Shown in pieces: positions 15,501-22,375 of a DNA stretch of 64,000 nt. The position numbers and the translations under genes were made by a program. Within the stretch, counting starts at the first letter, position 1; the number at the start of each line of letters is the position of its first letter. Below the pieces are notes generated by a model. That model made no database searches and had not been told where the DNA came from. It was given only the letters and a program-made list of their open reading frames with translations. This stretch comes from Macrostomum lignano (lineage: Eukaryota): contig NIVC01000985.1 of the NCBI GenBank assembly GCA_002269645.1, forward strand, positions 62,001 through 126,000, read 5' to 3'.

Positions 15501-18118
15501 CTCCAACCTGACTAGACGGACTATCCAGGTGTTGTCGAGCGCGCCGCATCAGTGGGTTGAACGCTCGGGCTAGGAGGGCTTCGCATAGGTCGCGCAGACC
15601 CTCGGTGACGCGCGAGGTTGTGATAGGCGCGGCGCCGCCTTCAAAATCGCAGCCGCCAGCGCCGGTCGAGCGAGGATCGTCCACTACTAGGCGGCGATTT
15701 TTTGGCACTTTGCGGCGGGTTTTGTCCTGATCACAGGACCAGTCCCGCAGCTGGTTGAGGTCTCGGTGGAACACCACGGGCCGGCCGGCCACGCCCGTGA
15801 CCCCAGTTAGCTGGTAGGTGCCGCCGAACCTGCAGAGGCAGTGGGCATTGAGGCTACTTGACAATCAAGTTACTTGATAACCAGGCTACTTGACAACCAG
15901 GCTAATTGACAACCTGGCTACTTGACAACCAGGCTATTGGCTACCTGGCTACTTGACAACCAGACTATTGGCTACCTGGCTACTTGACAACCAGTCTATT
16001 AACTAACTGCCTGGCTATTAACTACCTGGCTACTAGCTACATGGCTATTAGCTACCTGGATATTGGCTCACCTGTCTATAAACTACCTAATGCTCTAATT
16101 AGCTACCTGGCTGCTTACGACTACTGGAGGCTTAACGCTCAGATTTAGCTGGTCTTTCTATCGATAATTTTGTCCATCGGCCAGCAAAATTCAACGCGAC
16201 TTGAAGCTTTCTAGTAAATAAATCGTAATAGAGTCATTGTAGGTGCATCAAACGCCCAGTGTAACTGAATAAAAGAATATCAGTCTAGGAGTATCTGCAC
16301 CAATAAGTCAATTGCTCTCTGAGAACGGATAGCACGCACTGCCATTAAATTACATTAGCCTAAATGCGAGCACAAAAATTCTCAGAATACAAATCTATTA
16401 TTGTCGGTGTATCAAACGCCTAATAAACTGAATCAATTCAATCAGCCTAGGAGTATCTACACCTTAAATTTACTCTCTGAGAACGGATAGCACGCATTGT
16501 CATTTAAAAAATATTATTTTTTGACCCAAATGCGAGCACAAAATTCTCAGGCCATATACGCCGGACTGAATGCTTCGCGTATATGTTGGCGTTTACATGC
16601 GTAATAAGCGCCCGACTCTTGCATCACGACCCCTGGTTCGATTCCGTGCGCCAGCACAATTCATTTGGGGCCTGTCGTACGATTCAAACCCGTGAGGGCC
16701 AATCCCTAAGGCACAGAGTCAGAGTGTGTACATGCCTGACAATTAGAAAGTCAGGGCCGCTGTACACCCCGTGTGAGCGTGTGTATGAGTGCGTGCCTGA
16801 GTACAGCATTGGCATGTGCTCAGCGGAATGGTGCAGAATTGCCTCAGCGCTTGCATTGGAACTTGTCTAAGCTGATCTGCTACGCTCATATATTCAATTA
16901 GCAAAGTAATGTACGATTTACCTGCCCCTGCCTTGCCCCCCTTCGCTCTGTACACTGTACACTGCTTTATCGATCGTCCAGTCGCCCCAACCCCCTTATT
17001 GACTCACCAATGCTAGCCATCGCTCCGGCGGGCTCTTTACCTTTTTGCGCCTCGTATTCTAATATAACTGGCCGATTTCACAATACCGCTGGTTGGGGGG
17101 GCAAGTCATGTCAGCAATTTTTACACGCATTATATGGTCTGTTATAGGGTAAACAGCAAGAGCTACTATGACTCTATTAAGATTGTCAGGCGCCTCGTCA
17201 TCTAATCACTCACCTTCCATGCCTTGTGGACAGGTATCGAAAATTGTCACACCGAGTCTCGGATCGAGCCTCGGCTTTGGCCGCTCGCTCCAGCGCGGCC
17301 GATGCGGACGCAACCGCGGCGCTGCCGCCGGCCAGAGCGGCCGGATTCCTGTGCCGCAGCAGCAGGTGCAAAATCTCCAACAGGTGCATGCTGTAGTGCT
17401 TGCAACCGGCGGAGTTGGCCGCCAAGCCAACCAGGGCCCGCGGCAGGCCGGCGTCCAGCAGGCAGCGAATCAGGCGCTCATGACAGATGCGCGGATCGTC
17501 GCGGGCGTCCTGACCGCAATTAACAGCGGCATCGACTCCGCCGGCGTGTAGGACATTGCGCAGTACAACTAGCACCCTTTCGAGTCCTTCGCGCTCCTCG
17601 TCGCCGATATAATCCGAGCCAGCGTCGCGACGATCAACAAAATTATCGATTAATTTAGTGAATTGACGCAGCAGCTCGACGTCGCAAAAAGCCAGCTTGT
17701 AGTCGGCCAGGTGGCTGAGCAAGGCGATGTAGTGCGGCCTGCGTGCCGGGTCAGGCAGCTGGTTCTGGAAGCACAGCAGGGCCGGCTTGGTCAGGCACAC
17801 CATCAGTCGGAGTGTCCGGTCTAGAACGTCGGTCTCGTCAGCGTAGCGCTTCACTAGGGGCAGCAGGTCGCGCTGCAGCAAACGCAGCCTGGCCAGCTCG
17901 CGCCGCATATCGCAGGTGTCATCTTCGCGACGGAGGCAGCGGAGAATGTCGCGCAGAGTCTCGGCGCAGTCTGGCTCGCGAATGTACACACCGGATTCGT
18001 CCGGGAAGCCGAGAGAGTTGCAGAATACGTGCAGATCGGCGAAGCGCTGATTAGTGGACGGCTGCGGCTCCGACTGCTGCTGACTAGGCTGGGACCGCTG
18101 CGACTGCGATGAAGCCAT
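12547..18118 (-). CDS. TIMELESS: Timeless / Tof1-family replication fork protection protein, 2 coding exons
   Basis: Exons 18118-17214 and 15829-12547 join as ...STRHGR|FGGTY. Motifs YIREPDCAETLRDILRCLRREDD, LLQRDLLPL, LRLMVCLTKP, FYLWSVKFF and C-terminal LAWLADQLADCLRDR match mammalian-type TIMELESS. Confidence 0.93.
15855..16110. repeat. Degenerate 16-26-bp tandem repeat (gctacttgacaaccag / gctacctg) in the TIMELESS intron
   Basis: Visible tandem copies. Confidence 0.8.
16235..16386 (-). ncRNA. Box H/ACA RNA copy 1 (predicted U2 Psi34 guide)
   Basis: Hairpin CUGAGAA...UUCUCAG, H box AGAGCA (16318-16313), second hairpin GGUGC...GCACC, ACA (16240-16238) plus 3 nt. Pocket AGAUACU / CGUUUGAU. 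Confidence 0.82.
16399..16550 (-). ncRNA. Box H/ACA RNA copy 2 (predicted U2 Psi34 guide)
   Basis: Same architecture: H box AGAGUA (16476-16471), ACA at 16404-16402, compensatory stem changes (GGUGU/ACACC, CCUAG/UUAGG). Confidence 0.82.
16583..16870 (+). mobile_element. tRNA-derived SINE, family A
   Basis: B-box GGTTCGATTCC near 16634 followed by the family core atttggggc...gagggccaa..c..ggcacag..gtgtgtacatgcctgac. Confidence 0.8.
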
Positions 18119-18351
18119 GATGAATGCAGTCAGCCCGGTTGCAGCGGGTGATGGGGAGAAATGCTTGGCTAACGACTGTCTCAGTACACTACTTTGAACT
18201 GCCTGAATATTGTCTACCTGGCCTTGTGTTTATTCAATTTTAATTAGCAATTTTGCCTCAGACAGTGACTTAGCATCTGCCATCTACCATACTTGATGAT
18301 ACACAGTGTTAAAGATCTTAGAGATTTAGTACATTTTATATTGTATATTGT

Positions 18352-18503
18352 GATTGTAGGTGCATCAAACGCCCAGTACACTGAATATTGCAATGCTCAG
18401 CCTAGGAGTATTCTACACCCTAAATGAGTTGATTGCTCTCTGAGAACGGATAGCACGCACTGTCATTATAGATTAACACAAGTGCGAGCACAATAATTCT
18501 CAG
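18352..18503 (-). ncRNA. Box H/ACA RNA copy 3 (1-nt insertion in the guide pocket)
   Basis: H box AGAGCA (18439-18434), ACA at 18357-18355; left pocket reads AGAAUACU instead of AGAUACU. Confidence 0.75.
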
Positions 18504-18547
18504 TTGTCGTAATACAGTGTGTGCTGTATTAGTACTGTCTACACTAT

Positions 18548-18960
18548 GTAAACTACCTGAAGATTGTCTACCTGGAACTTCACTACCTGAATACTGTCTG
18601 CCTGGCGTTTCACTACCTGAATATTGTCTACCTGGCGTTTCACTACCTGAATATTGTCTACGTGGTTTTTCACTACCTGAATATTGTCTACCTGGCGTTT
18701 CACTACCTGAATATTGTCTACGTGGTGTTTCACTACCTGAATATTGTCTACCTGGCGTTTCACTACCTGAATATTGTCTACCTGGCGTTTCACTACCTGA
18801 ACATTGTCTACTTGGCTTTTCACTACCTGAATATTGTCTACTTGGCTTTTCACTACCTGAATATTGTCTACCTGGAAGTTCACTACCTGAATATTGTCTA
18901 CTTGGCTTTTCACTACCTGAATATTGTTTACCTGGAAGTTCACTACCTGAGTATTGTCTA
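18548..18960. repeat. 30-bp minisatellite between H/ACA copies 3 and 4
   Basis: Unit cactacctgaatattgtctacctggcgttt, about 14 copies. Confidence 0.95.
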
Positions 18961-19060
18961 CTTTTGTTTCGTTTATTCAATTTCAATTAGTAATTTTGTT
19001 TAACGGTTTCTAGACAGTGACTTAACATCTACCGGTACTGTACTTAATGGTAAAAAAGTG

Positions 19061-19211
19061 TATTGTAGGTGCATCAAACGCCCAGTACACTGAATATGTC
19101 AATGCTCAGCCTAGGAGTATCTACACCCTACATGAGTTGATTACTCTCTGAGAACGGATAGCACGCACTGTCATTATGGATTAACACAAGTGCGAGCACA
19201 ATAATTCTCAG
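19061..19211 (-). ncRNA. Box H/ACA RNA copy 4 (predicted U2 Psi34 guide)
   Basis: CUGAGAA...UUCUCAG, AGAGUA, then GGUGU AGAUACU CCUAG...CUGGG CGUUUGAU GCACC U ACA AUA. Confidence 0.82.
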
Positions 19212-20414
19212 TTTTCATATAACATGCTAACAGTGGCCGAGTACATTACTATACACAACAATACAATAAAAATATTGACCCTAACAGGGGTGAAAGTAAA
19301 AACGGTGTCATTATAATAGTATATTTACAAAAGCGGAATATATATATTGGATAAATAATAGCAACAGCCAAGGGCTTACAGACAGGAAGCGCGAGAAAAA
19401 TAGAATTGTCCGATAATGATTACTAATCATAATTAATACAATAAAAACAATTAAAATGGTCAAAATGGGGATTACTTTAATAAACATAAAAGACTGAATA
19501 AAATTAGGAAAAATAACCCAGAGTTTAACTGGTTGTTAAGAAATTTATGAAAGAAGCAGATTGGAAGACGGCAACAAATTAAAAGGCACTTCTACCTAGA
19601 CCAGTGCTTAGTATAGTGTTGGCAGGTGTTAGTTGATGATAAAAAACTGCATAGGTTTGGTCATTTTAGCCGTGTGATAGCAGATTGTTACAGGGAAGAA
19701 TAGCTCGTATCTACAGGAAGATTTATAAGCAGCTGATAATAACGTCTGCTACTGACAGTAGTGTGCATAGCCTGCTAAAAACTTGCTTTTTAAATAATGC
19801 ATTGAAATTTGGAAATTGTAATACATTTAGGGCCTTATATAGATCCGAATTGTTGCTTTAAATTGCGATAATAATGGCACAATAAATAAAAGAGAAGCTG
19901 TTCAGTATTATGATAGAAACTTCTCTGGGTTGAAGCACAATAATTCTTTGTTGCTGCGCATAATGAAGAAACATACATAAATATAGACCAGTGGAATTTA
20001 GATAAACCTTGGTCAGCCCAATCACTTTAGCTTATTTTTTTTACATCTGGCTCTAGGCGACTCTAAAATGATGAGATGTCACAGTCAGTACAAGTCGCCT
20101 AAGAGCCAATTTGAGGCGTTTCATTGTCTGCGACTTTGAATCAACCCTGGGGTTACTTTATAAACTAGAATCGCATTTCGCATCTATAACAACTATATCT
20201 AGTCTACTTGAGTAATTCGAAACATAAGCGCTAAAACACCGACTTTACGATTCTGCAACTCCCGCTTATGTTGCGCGATTTAGTCGCTAAAATTACTAGT
20301 GCGTTGTTTGCAATGAATCTTTAGCTGTGAAAGTTTAATATTCTGGCTCACAGAAGTAGTTGTCAAGATTTTCTGGGGCTTAGACAACGCATACAGAGAT
20401 AAGACAGCAGATTA

Positions 20415-20804
20415 TCAGGCAGGCTTCGATTGGAACACTCCAGCCGAAGCCAATATGGACATAATAATAATGATAATAATAACGGCAACCACAACAGCCA
20501 GAATAATCTTCATTTTGGTATTCTGCCACCACATTTTCCGTTGCACCCGAGTTGTAGTCCGGCTGTACTGCACAGCGGACTCCTGCAGCGCCTCGGTCCG
20601 GTCCACCAGCTTGTTGATGTTGCCATCCCGTTCGATAATCCTGTTCATGTTGTCCCGCATCACGTCGGACACTTCGCCGACTGTCTGCTGCATTTGCTGC
20701 AGCCGGATATCGTCTGGATGCTGCGGCTGCGGCTGCGGCTGATCAGCGCCGCCACCGCCTCCGTCACCGCCTCCGCCGCCGTAGTTGTACCTTGACGAAC
20801 TCAT
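20415..20804 (-). CDS. Synaptobrevin/VAMP-family R-SNARE, single coding exon
   Basis: RLQQMQQTVGEVSDVMRDNMNRIIERDGNINKLVDRTEALQ R-SNARE motif, WWQNTKM juxtamembrane segment and C-terminal TM helix. Exact VAMP paralog not assignable. Confidence 0.93.
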   Translation of the reverse strand: MSSSRYNYGGGGGDGGGGGADQPQPQPQHPDDIRLQQMQQTVGEVSDVMRDNMNRIIERDGNINKLVDRTEALQESAVQYSRTTTRVQRKMWWQNTKMKIILAVVVAVIIIIIIMSILASAGVFQSKPA

Positions 20805-21620: not shown

Positions 21621-22375
21621 CGAGGGGTGTCGCATGACTGTTTTTCACAGTCAGCAAGAGTAACAGCAACTGATCCATTTCATAGCGGCTTTACTTACTA
21701 ATGACAGTGAAAAATTGTGAAAATATCAAGAACTTTTCAAAAGTTATACCTCTTTTTACTTGCAGTGGGGTACTGCATCTCAATGAACAGGAACTTGGAT
21801 GCTGCATATGAAGCCCCAGGAAACAGTAAGTCAGTTGTCTTTCAAAAAAGTTTAAATGTCTTCCTCAGTGGCAACTGAGACCTCAATATAGGCACCCTTC
21901 AGTTGGATTGCATTTCCTTCACCGGGAAAGCATGTCTTCAATGGCATCTGCGTACGCCTGTCTTGGCATTTCGTGGACAACAAGAACCTGTCGCACTTCC
22001 TGCTCAAGGCTGACACTATTAGCATGAACTCTGCCCCTCAGATTCAGAGTGCCACACAAGCAGAAGCAAATGAAACTTGTACCATAGATATAGAAAGTGA
22101 TGACATGGCACATGCTAGAGATGTTTCGCACAATGTCGAATTTGGTTAATTTCTGTGAGAGTTAAAATTGTAGTCCAGTTCAGTTCTTGTTCATTGAGAT
22201 GAAGTACTCCACTGCAGTTAAGGAGACTTAACTCTTGAAAAGTTCATGATATCTTCAAAATTATTTTACTGGGTCATTAGTAAGTAAAGCCGCTATGAAA
22301 TAAATCAGTTTATGTTACTCTTGCTGACTGTTAAAATAATGTGAAAAAGTCCTAAGACTTTTTGGACACCCCTCA
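21621..22375 (-). mobile_element. Non-autonomous Tc1/mariner deletion derivative
   Basis: TA|CGAGGGGTGTC...GACACCCCTCA|TA, with ~180-bp imperfect TIRs. Internal remnant QAYADAIEDMLSR*RKCNPTEGCLY resembles a mariner transposase C-terminus. Confidence 0.85.

What the first reader, a model, noticed from the sequence alone, without database searches (positions are those of the whole stretch)
16235..19211. Four paralogous box H/ACA RNAs whose 3' pocket fits U2 snRNA U34 (branch-site pseudouridine guide)
Seen: a ~150-nt unit occurs four times on the minus strand (16235-16386, 16399-16550, 18352-18503, 19061-19211). Each has hairpin, ANANNA (AGAGYA), hairpin, then ACA+3 nt. Loops and hinges diverge while stems and pockets are kept, with compensatory changes: the lower-stem pair is C-G, U-A or U-G across copies, and the upper stem is CCUAG with CUGGG or UUAGG. 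Established: the conserved U2 sequence reads 26-AUCAAGUG U34 AGUAUCU-41, Psi34 (yeast Psi35) lies in the branch-point helix, and human scaRNA8/U92 is its annotated guide. Inference: right pocket CGUUUGAU pairs with U2 26-33 (6 Watson-Crick plus 2 G-U), left pocket AGAUACU pairs with U2 35/36-41, and U34 sits 14 nt from ACA, the canonical spacing. This predicts an amplified spliceosomal pseudouridylation guide family hosted by the TIMELESS locus.
Basis: partly seen in the sequence, partly recalled or inferred. Interest (0 to 1): 0.88.

Follow-up and report, generated by a model that had tools for sequence, protein, structure and literature searches.

The report
Flatworm H/ACA guide RNAs for U2
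Four neighbouring copies of a small box H/ACA guide RNA gene lie in and just upstream of the TIMELESS gene of the flatworm Macrostomum lignano. One guide pocket fits the U2 spliceosomal RNA so as to convert U34 of the branch-site region to pseudouridine; this is an unannotated but ordinary kind of gene.

Summary
Four ~151-nt units lie on the minus strand: 16235-16385, 16399-16550, 18352-18503 and 19061-19211. No further copy occurs in the 64 kb window. The window is Macrostomum lignano contig NIVC01000985.1.

Each unit folds as hairpin, AGAGYA, hairpin, ACA plus 3 nt. All 30 modelled base pairs hold in all four copies. Six pairs vary and all stay paired; three differ on both sides between copies. 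Pockets and boxes vary at 3 of 36 columns, loops and hinge at 46 of 61. Similarity between copies stops at the predicted RNA ends.

The 3' pocket (AGAUAC(U) / CGUUUGAU) pairs with U2 26-33 and 36-41, which puts U34 14 nt from ACA. None of 20,000 shuffled pockets matched any snRNA as well.

Not shown: expression, this species' own U2 sequence, genome-wide copy number, and any target for the conserved 5' pocket.

It is not detectably an SCARNA8 homologue. Rfam gives no hit, and the Psi34 pocket sits in the 3' hairpin rather than, as inferred for SCARNA8, the 5' hairpin. Only two copies are intronic (TIMELESS intron 1); the other two lie upstream of the start codon.

Verdict: a real, probably unannotated H/ACA guide family. 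It is a new member of a known kind and of modest interest.

The parts
16235..16385 (-). Copy c1 of the H/ACA unit (151 nt), in TIMELESS intron 1. H box AGAGCA 16318-16313; ACA 16240-16238. 3' pocket strands AGAUACU 16296-16290 and CGUUUGAU 16254-16247. 5' pocket strands UUUUGU 16377-16372 and UAUCC 16331-16327.
   Evidence: (172 bits)
16399..16550 (-). Copy c2 (152 nt), in TIMELESS intron 1, 13 nt upstream of c1. H box AGAGUA 16476-16471; ACA 16404-16402. 3' pocket AGAUACU 16458-16452 and CGUUUGAU 16418-16411. The 3' lower stem closes with U-A and the upper stem is CCUAG/UUAGG.
   Evidence: (153 bits)
18352..18503 (-). Copy c3 (152 nt), 234 nt upstream of the TIMELESS ATG. H box AGAGCA 18439-18434; ACA 18357-18355. 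3' pocket AGAAUACU 18414-18407 (one extra A) and CGUUUGAU 18371-18364.
   Evidence: (178 bits)
19061..19211 (-). Copy c4 (151 nt), 943 nt upstream of the TIMELESS ATG and 1204 nt downstream of the synaptobrevin-like gene's stop codon. H box AGAGUA 19147-19142; ACA 19066-19064. 3' pocket AGAUACU 19122-19116 and CGUUUGAU 19080-19073.
   Evidence: (182 bits)
15830..17213 (-). TIMELESS intron 1 (GUGAGU donor at 17213, cag|G acceptor at 15830/15829). It is the host intron of c2 and c1.
   Evidence: The spliced junction STRHGRFGGTYQLTG is collinear with human TIMELESS RHSRFGGSYIVQG (7PFO chain K, E=4.6e-22)
17214..18118 (-). TIMELESS coding exon 1 (ATG at 18118). It separates the upstream pair (c4, c3) from the intronic pair (c2, c1).
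   Evidence: Pfam TIMELESS E=2.3e-38

Best explanation
These are four paralogous genes for a two-hairpin box H/ACA pseudouridylation guide RNA of Macrostomum lignano. All are in the same orientation as TIMELESS.

**Production (inferred).** c2 and c1 would be released from TIMELESS intron 1. c4 and c3 would come from the upstream leader, outron or intergenic transcript. Dyskerin, Nop10, Nhp2 and Gar1 would bind the hairpins and the H and ACA boxes. Exonucleases would then trim the RNA to the base of the 5' hairpin and to 3 nt past ACA.

**Action (shown at sequence level only).** The 3' pocket pairs with U2 snRNA on both sides of U34: CGUUUGAU with nt 26-33, and AGAUAC with nt 36-41. This leaves U34 (and A35) at the base of the upper stem, 14 nt from ACA, where dyskerin would isomerise it to pseudouridine. 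Psi34 is the pseudouridine in the GΨAGUA branch-point recognition sequence. The RNA is therefore a functional analogue of the Psi34 domain of SCARNA8/U92.

The 5' pocket is conserved among the copies, but its target is unknown.
For: **H/ACA architecture.**
- All four copies fold into the two-hairpin architecture.
- The boxes are correctly placed.
- 120 of 120 pair cells are standard pairs, against 25-50% when the partners are slid by 1-3 columns.
- Six pairs vary and all six stay paired. Three differ on both sides between copies: C-G, U-A and U-G.

**Selection on the functional parts.**
- Variable columns: pockets and boxes 3/36, stems 9/62, loops and hinge 46/61. Fisher p=5e-16 for functional parts against loops.
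- c3 and c4 are 95% identical inside the unit. Similarity drops abruptly just before CUGAGAA and just after ACAAU.
- The copies are otherwise only 69-77% identical, so they are old and maintained.

**Target.**
- The U2 U34 fit is 8+6 bp, or 15 bp if A35 pairs. It is the only hit of 7 bp or more among five snRNAs.
- 0 of 20,000 composition-matched shuffles reach 15 bp and 21 of 20,000 reach 14 bp. For fully random pockets, 2 of 20,000 reach 15 bp.
- The base next to the target, G33, pairs with C by Watson-Crick. This is the position reported as most sensitive (abstract of PMC5733568).
- The U2 19-46 sequence and numbering are verified for Xenopus.
- RNA-guided Psi34 is established in vertebrates and Drosophila.
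Against: - There is no evidence of expression or protein binding.
A Drosophila- or fish-type CAAAGUG variant would leave 5+6 bp.
- Two adjacent G-U wobbles sit at U2 positions 31 and 32.
- Either one guide U is left unpaired next to the upper stem, or A35 is paired so that only one substrate base is free.
- With four sequences the covariation is not formally significant (53-65 of 500 shuffles reach the observed values).
- No conserved UGAG CAB box was found.
- There is no Rfam hit.
- Genome-wide copy number is unknown.
- Psi34 can also be made by Pus7 without a guide (PMC5473140), so the guide may be redundant.
Confidence: 0.72

Rival explanations
1. It is a genuine H/ACA RNA, but its real substrate is rRNA or some other RNA. 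The fit to U2 would then be fortuitous or secondary, making it an ordinary nucleolar snoRNA.
For: - No conserved CAB box was found.
- The conserved 5' pocket has no snRNA or spliced-leader target, so at least one pocket must act elsewhere or be inactive.
- Dual snRNA/rRNA guides are known in Drosophila (PMC3884663).
- The exact Watson-Crick complement of the 3' pocket (AUCAAACG..AGUAUCU) differs from U2 at two positions.
Against: - The U2 match is 14-15 contiguous pairs, placed exactly on a conserved pseudouridine with the correct spacing. Chance is about 1e-3 or less before even requiring a known Psi site.
- No match of 8 bp or more was found in about 2 kb of rRNA fragments recalled from memory. 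This is a weak, unverified test.
Confidence: 0.13
2. It is a locally duplicated repeat or mobile-element fragment (for example a snoRNA-derived retroposon or a satellite-associated unit) that is no longer a working guide.
For: - Three of the four copies are followed by related CCAGGUAG minisatellites.
- c3 and c4 sit inside a larger segmental duplication with a shared downstream block.
- M. lignano is a repeat-rich hidden polyploid (PMC10468722 abstract).
- Genome-wide copy number could not be checked.
Against: - Divergence is concentrated in loops and hinge. Pockets, boxes and stems are preserved, with compensatory pairs.
- Conservation ends exactly at the predicted RNA termini.
- All copies share the host gene's strand, and none lies elsewhere in the 64 kb window.
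Confidence: 0.08
3. It is a different hairpin RNA, such as a miRNA or other small-RNA precursor or a cis-regulatory intron structure, and only resembles an H/ACA RNA by chance.
For: The hairpins are stable, and there is no Rfam family match.
Against: - ANANNA and ACA sit at exactly the canonical positions.
- Both hairpins carry internal loops at the canonical distance from their box (13-16 nt and 14 nt).
- The conserved parts are the loop strands (the pockets), not a 22-nt arm.
Confidence: 0.03

Closest known systems
SCARNA8 / U92 / pugU2-34/44 (vertebrates) and scaRNA:PsiU2-35.45 (Drosophila)
   Same: It is a two-hairpin box H/ACA RNA, partly intron-encoded, with a pocket that brackets U34 of the U2 branch-point recognition region.
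   Different: - The Rfam SCARNA8 model gives no hit, even at E<=10.
- Here the Psi34 pocket is in the 3' hairpin. In SCARNA8 the 3'-terminal pocket serves Psi43/44 (PMC5733568), so its Psi34 pocket is inferred to be the 5' one.
- No pocket here carries the conserved ACAGAUAC element that guides Psi44 (PMC5473140).
[quoted passage not shown]
- The host gene is TIMELESS, against gp210 in Drosophila.
Generic intron-encoded box H/ACA snoRNAs, including multi-snoRNA introns
   Same: The architecture, boxes, pocket geometry and sense orientation inside a host-gene intron all match. c2 and c1 sit in tandem in one intron.
   Different: - Two copies lie outside any demonstrated intron, upstream of the start codon.
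- The best predicted substrate is an snRNA rather than rRNA.
Pus7 (stand-alone pseudouridine synthase for U2 Psi34/35)
   Same: It acts on the same substrate position. It is known to act redundantly with the guide RNA in Xenopus, human and Drosophila.
   Different: It is a protein-only mechanism and is not encoded in this region.

Membership tests
Box H/ACA guide RNA | Hairpin-hinge-hairpin-tail secondary structure | tested here: met
   All four copies give this minimum-free-energy fold, with z -2.7 to -4.3. 30 of 30 pairs hold in 4 of 4 copies.
Box H/ACA guide RNA | H box (ANANNA) in the hinge, directly after the 5' hairpin | tested here: met
   AGAGCA or AGAGUA abuts the 5' lower stem in all copies.
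Box H/ACA guide RNA | ACA box 3 nt from the mature 3' end | tested here: inconclusive
   ACA is present 1 nt after the 3' hairpin in all copies, and similarity between copies ends 2-3 nt after it. The mature 3' end is not mapped.
Box H/ACA guide RNA | Internal-loop pocket whose upper-stem base lies 14-16 nt from the H or ACA box | tested here: met
   The 3' hairpin has 14 nt (CGUUUGAU+RCACC+N). The 5' hairpin has 13 nt, or 16 nt if the two G-C pairs below the U.U mismatch open.
Box H/ACA guide RNA | Bipartite complementarity to a substrate, flanking an unpaired U | tested here: met
   The 3' pocket gives 8+6 bp around U2 U34. The U2 sequence comes from other species. No substrate was found for the 5' pocket.
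Box H/ACA guide RNA | Stable ~130-150-nt RNA bound by dyskerin, Nop10, Nhp2 and Gar1 | not testable with these tools
   No expression or RNP data are available here.
scaRNA (Cajal-body-specific H/ACA RNA) | CAB box (ugAG) in the terminal loops | tested here: inconclusive
   UGAG occurs in the apical part of the 3' hairpin only in c3 and c4; c1 and c2 have UGAU. None occurs in the 5' loops. The flatworm CAB consensus is unknown, and Drosophila scaRNAs can function without a CAB box (PMC3884663).
SCARNA8/U92 family (homology) | Match to the family's sequence and structure model | tested here: not met
   Rfam 15 gives no hit at gathering threshold over the window, nor at E<=10 over 15800-19600.
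SCARNA8/U92 family (homology) | Second pocket for U2 Psi43/44 with the conserved ACAGAUAC 3' strand | tested here: not met
   The 5' pocket strands are U(A/U)UUGU and UAUCC. There is no pairing around U43 or U44. The defining element is taken from PMC5473140.

The most novel reading that the evidence does not exclude
The flatworm lineage may have evolved, or rearranged, its own U2-Psi34 guide independently of SCARNA8. The Psi34 pocket has moved to the 3' hairpin and is partnered with a conserved 5' pocket for a still-unknown, possibly flatworm-specific substrate. The gene is amplified to four copies. Two of them would be matured not from an intron but from the outron or intercistronic RNA of an SL trans-spliced gene, which would be a route of guide-RNA biogenesis not described in animals as far as I know.
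Probability: 0.2. Interest if true: 0.5.

Novelty: new member of a known kind. Interest (0 to 1): 0.35.

Why it matters
- Pseudouridine at U2 position 34/35 lies in the branch-point recognition sequence and is among the most conserved snRNA modifications.
- RNA guides for it have been shown experimentally in vertebrates and Drosophila.
- A credible guide in a platyhelminth would extend RNA-guided Psi34 to the Lophotrochozoa.
- It would also show that the pocket can sit in a different hairpin and in a multi-copy gene.
- It gives M. lignano, a regeneration model with no snoRNA or scaRNA annotation that I could find, a first concrete candidate.
- It does not change how these systems are understood.

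Tried and rejected
1. **Rfam scans.** The gathering-threshold scan of the whole window and the E<=10 scan of 15800-19600 gave no H/ACA or SCARNA8 hit.
2. **Orthologous or paralogous loci for real covariation.**
   - Two protein searches with TIMELESS exons found only one UniProt M. lignano model.
   - That model and the exon-1 ORF are not on record in the contig collection.
   - The only contig retrievable, through the synaptobrevin-like protein, is the window itself.
3. **Metagenome scan for a 19-mer of the unit.** It gave two hits, both chance. The covariance model scores 9.4 bits or less on them.
4. **5' pocket targets.** The best is U2 U161 at 4+6 bp, which I do not know to be a pseudouridine. 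Nothing was found in the 35-nt M. lignano spliced leader (sequence from PMC8629364). Nothing of 8 bp or more was found in about 2 kb of remembered rRNA fragments.
5. **U2 Psi43/44 as the 5' pocket target (the SCARNA8 layout).** Rejected.
6. **CAB box.** Not conserved among the copies.
7. **A tRNA in intron 1, suggested by GGAATCGAACC.** ARAGORN finds none.
8. **The resemblance of c3/c4 GUUAAUC to a Drosophila CAB consensus.** It rests only on my memory and is not kept in c1 or c2, so it is not used.
Full report
**Origin and context.** The window is Macrostomum lignano, assembly GCA_002269645.1, contig NIVC01000985.1 (window x = record x + 62000). A 20.4-kb locus fetched through the synaptobrevin-like protein encoded at 20415-20804(-) is base-for-base identical to window 10415-30804. 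On the minus strand the gene order is:

| Feature | Window coordinates |
|---|---|
| EF-G-like GTPase gene (exons) | about 28474-22930 |
| Synaptobrevin-like single-exon gene | 20804-20415 |
| TIMELESS exon 1 | 18118-17214 |
| TIMELESS intron 1 | 17213-15830 |
| TIMELESS exon 2 | 15829-12547 |

 The intron borders are supported by homology. The spliced product ...STRHGRFGGTYQLTG... aligns without a break to human TIMELESS ...RHSRFGGSYIVQG... (7PFO chain K, E=4.6e-22).

**The observation.** The four units are real. They lie at 16235-16385 (c1), 16399-16550 (c2), 18352-18503 (c3) and 19061-19211 (c4), all on the minus strand.
- A 25-nt core occurs four times with up to 3 mismatches, against zero in 100 shuffles.
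- A covariance model of the four copies, run unfiltered on both strands of the 64 kb, finds these four at 153-182 bits and nothing else above 28 bits. The runners-up are opposite-strand echoes of the same loci.
- c3 and c4 are 95% identical. All other pairs are 69-77% identical.

**Architecture.** Each copy folds on its own into a 5' hairpin, a single-stranded hinge, a 3' hairpin and a short tail.
- 5' hairpin: 8-bp lower stem, internal loop, 8-9-bp upper stem with one U.U mismatch, and a 4-bp apical stem.
- 3' hairpin: 5-bp lower stem, 7-8/8-nt internal loop, 5-bp upper stem and a variable apex.
- Fold energy z-scores are -2.7 to -4.3.
- AGAGCA or AGAGUA (ANANNA) abuts the 5' hairpin. ACA follows the 3' hairpin after one nucleotide.
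- The base of the 3' upper stem is 14 nt from ACA. The base of the 5' upper stem is 13 nt from the H box, or 16 nt if the two G-C pairs under the U.U mismatch open.

**Evidence of constraint.**
- On the MAFFT alignment, all 30 modelled pairs are standard pairs in all four copies (120/120 cells). Sliding the 3' partners by 1-3 columns gives 25-50%.
- Six pairs vary and every variant still pairs. Three of them show both-side differences between copies: alignment columns 22-55 (U-G, U-A, C-G), 28-52 (C-G, U-A) and 100-152 (C-G, U-A, U-G).
- With only four sequences the shuffle control is not significant (53-65 of 500 shuffles). Covariation is therefore supportive, not proof.
- The distribution of change is stronger evidence. 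Variable columns are 3/36 in pockets and boxes, 9/62 in stems and 46/61 in loops and hinge. Fisher p=5e-16 for functional parts against loops.
- In the c3/c4 comparison with flanks, near-identity starts at CUGAGAA and ends at ACAAU. A 40-nt indel and about 75% identity follow beyond.
- This pattern is what selection, or conversion, acting on a mature H/ACA RNA would produce. It is not what a decaying repeat would produce.

**Target.** Xenopus U2 nt 19-46 reads GGCUAAGAUCAAGUGUAGUAUCUGUUCU. Yeast U2 from nt 31 reads AGUGUAGUAUCUGUUC.
- The 3' strand of the 3' pocket, 5'-CGUUUGAU-3', pairs with U2 26-33: C-G33, G.U32, U.G31, U-A30, U-A29, G-C28, A-U27, U-A26.
- The 5' strand, AGAUAC, pairs with U2 36-41. 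The last guide U either faces or pairs with A35.
- U34 is left at the base of the upper stem, 14 nt from ACA.

| Pocket set (20,000 each) | Reach 14 bp | Reach 15 bp |
|---|---|---|
| Composition-matched shuffles | 21 | 0 |
| Fully random pockets | 7 | 2 |

 The hit also falls on a known conserved pseudouridine.
- c3 has one extra A in the 5' strand (AGAAUACU). That leaves 8+4 bp, or 8+6 bp with a bulge.
- The position before the target (G33) is Watson-Crick paired. Deryusheva and Gall report this position as the most sensitive one (PMC5733568).

**Caveats.**
- The M. lignano U2 sequence was not obtainable.
- A CAAAGUG variant exists in some animals (Drosophila numbering is shifted by one). 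It would leave 5+6 bp.
- The two wobbles at U2 positions 31 and 32 are adjacent.

**The 5' pocket.** Its strands are U(U/A)UUGU, one nucleotide shorter in c2, and UAUCC. They extend to ...GCU and UGC... if the two G-C pairs under the U.U mismatch open. The strands are nearly invariant, but I found no convincing target in the snRNAs, in the M. lignano spliced leader, or in remembered rRNA fragments. It does not fit U2 U43 or U44.

**Comparison with what is known.**
- SCARNA8/U92/pugU2-34/44 is the established guide for U2 Psi34, Psi43 and Psi44 in vertebrates. Drosophila scaRNA:PsiU2-35.45 is its orthologue (PMC5473140, PMC5733568, PMC3884663).
- In SCARNA8 the 3'-terminal pocket serves positions 43 and 44, through a conserved ACAGAUAC strand. 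Its Psi34 pocket is therefore inferred to be the 5' one.
- In the flatworm RNA the Psi34 pocket is in the 3' hairpin, there is no Psi44 pocket, and Rfam detects no similarity. It works like the Psi34 domain of SCARNA8 but cannot be filed as a member of that family.
- SCARNA8 is single-copy in most vertebrates. Here there are four copies within 3 kb.
- Pus7 can also make Psi34, so redundancy is likely.
- No paper in the searchable library annotates snoRNAs or scaRNAs in M. lignano.

**Genomic setting and biogenesis (inference).**
- c2 and c1 are 13 nt apart in TIMELESS intron 1, in the sense orientation. They lie 663 nt from the donor and 405 nt from the acceptor.
- c4 and c3 lie upstream of the ATG, separated by a 30-nt minisatellite.
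[quoted passage not shown] Nothing here tests that.

**Verdict.** The U2-U34 assignment is the best available and statistically non-trivial. It remains conditional on the species' U2 sequence and on expression. This is a new member of a well-understood class, of moderate-to-low general interest.

Noticed in passing
window 17107-17213 (-), 5' end of TIMELESS intron 1: Candidate box C/D snoRNA. It reads: C-like GUGAUUA (17209-17203); AUUAGAUGACGAGGC, a 15-nt antisense to 28S GCCUCGUCAUCUAAU; then GC and CUGA (D', 17189-17186); later AUGCGUGU, antisense to the adjacent 28S ACGCGCAU; and a terminal CUGA (17114-17111). The 28S sequence was confirmed from a Drosophila rDNA primer. The only Rfam lead is snR75 at 16.2 bits and E=4.1, far below the gathering score of 40. 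It starts unusually close to the splice donor.
   Followed up: partly
window 18552-18961 and 15851-16088: One minisatellite (30-nt unit, 13.7 copies, 90% matches) lies between c4 and c3. A related 15/16/31-nt array lies downstream of c1. On the minus strand many units contain CCAGGUAG, which resembles a 5' splice site. Three of the four H/ACA copies are followed by such an array.
   Followed up: no
window 21642-21795 / 22182-22336: Long inverted repeat, with arms together about 150 nt and 80-88% complementary, about 390-550 nt apart. It looks like a foldback or MITE-type element between the EF-G-like and synaptobrevin-like genes.
   Followed up: no
window 15764-17584 (-): The UniProt gene model A0A1I8GP92 (TIMELESS domain protein) joins exon 1 at about 17312 to 15829 and reads the start of exon 2 in the wrong frame (RRHLPANWGHG...). 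The GTGAGT donor at 17213 gives the conserved RFGGTYQLTG sequence instead.
   Followed up: yes
window ~18235-18300 and ~18960-19020 (-): A block conserved downstream of both c3 and c4 (AAGUCACUGUCU ... AAAAUURCUAAUURAAAUUGAAUAAAC) contains an AAUAAA hexamer. It could be part of the duplicated segment only, or a processing or polyadenylation signal for an independent transcript.
   Followed up: no
window ~16640-16650: GGAATCGAACC on the minus strand (GGTTCGATTCC on the plus strand) resembles a tRNA T-arm, but ARAGORN finds no tRNA. It may be a tRNA-derived repeat fragment or chance.
   Followed up: partly
window 16327-16333, 16485-16491, 18448-18454 and 19156-19162 (CUAUCCG); 16366-16373, 16532-16539, 18484-18491 and 19192-19199 (GUGCUCGC) (-): In all four copies the 5' hairpin carries CUAUCCG and GUGCUCGC. 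These are identical in sense, not complementary, to the human U2 stem-loop IIb loop (CUAUCCG) and to the U6 5' end (GUGCUCGC), both as I recall them from memory. Probably coincidence.
   Followed up: no
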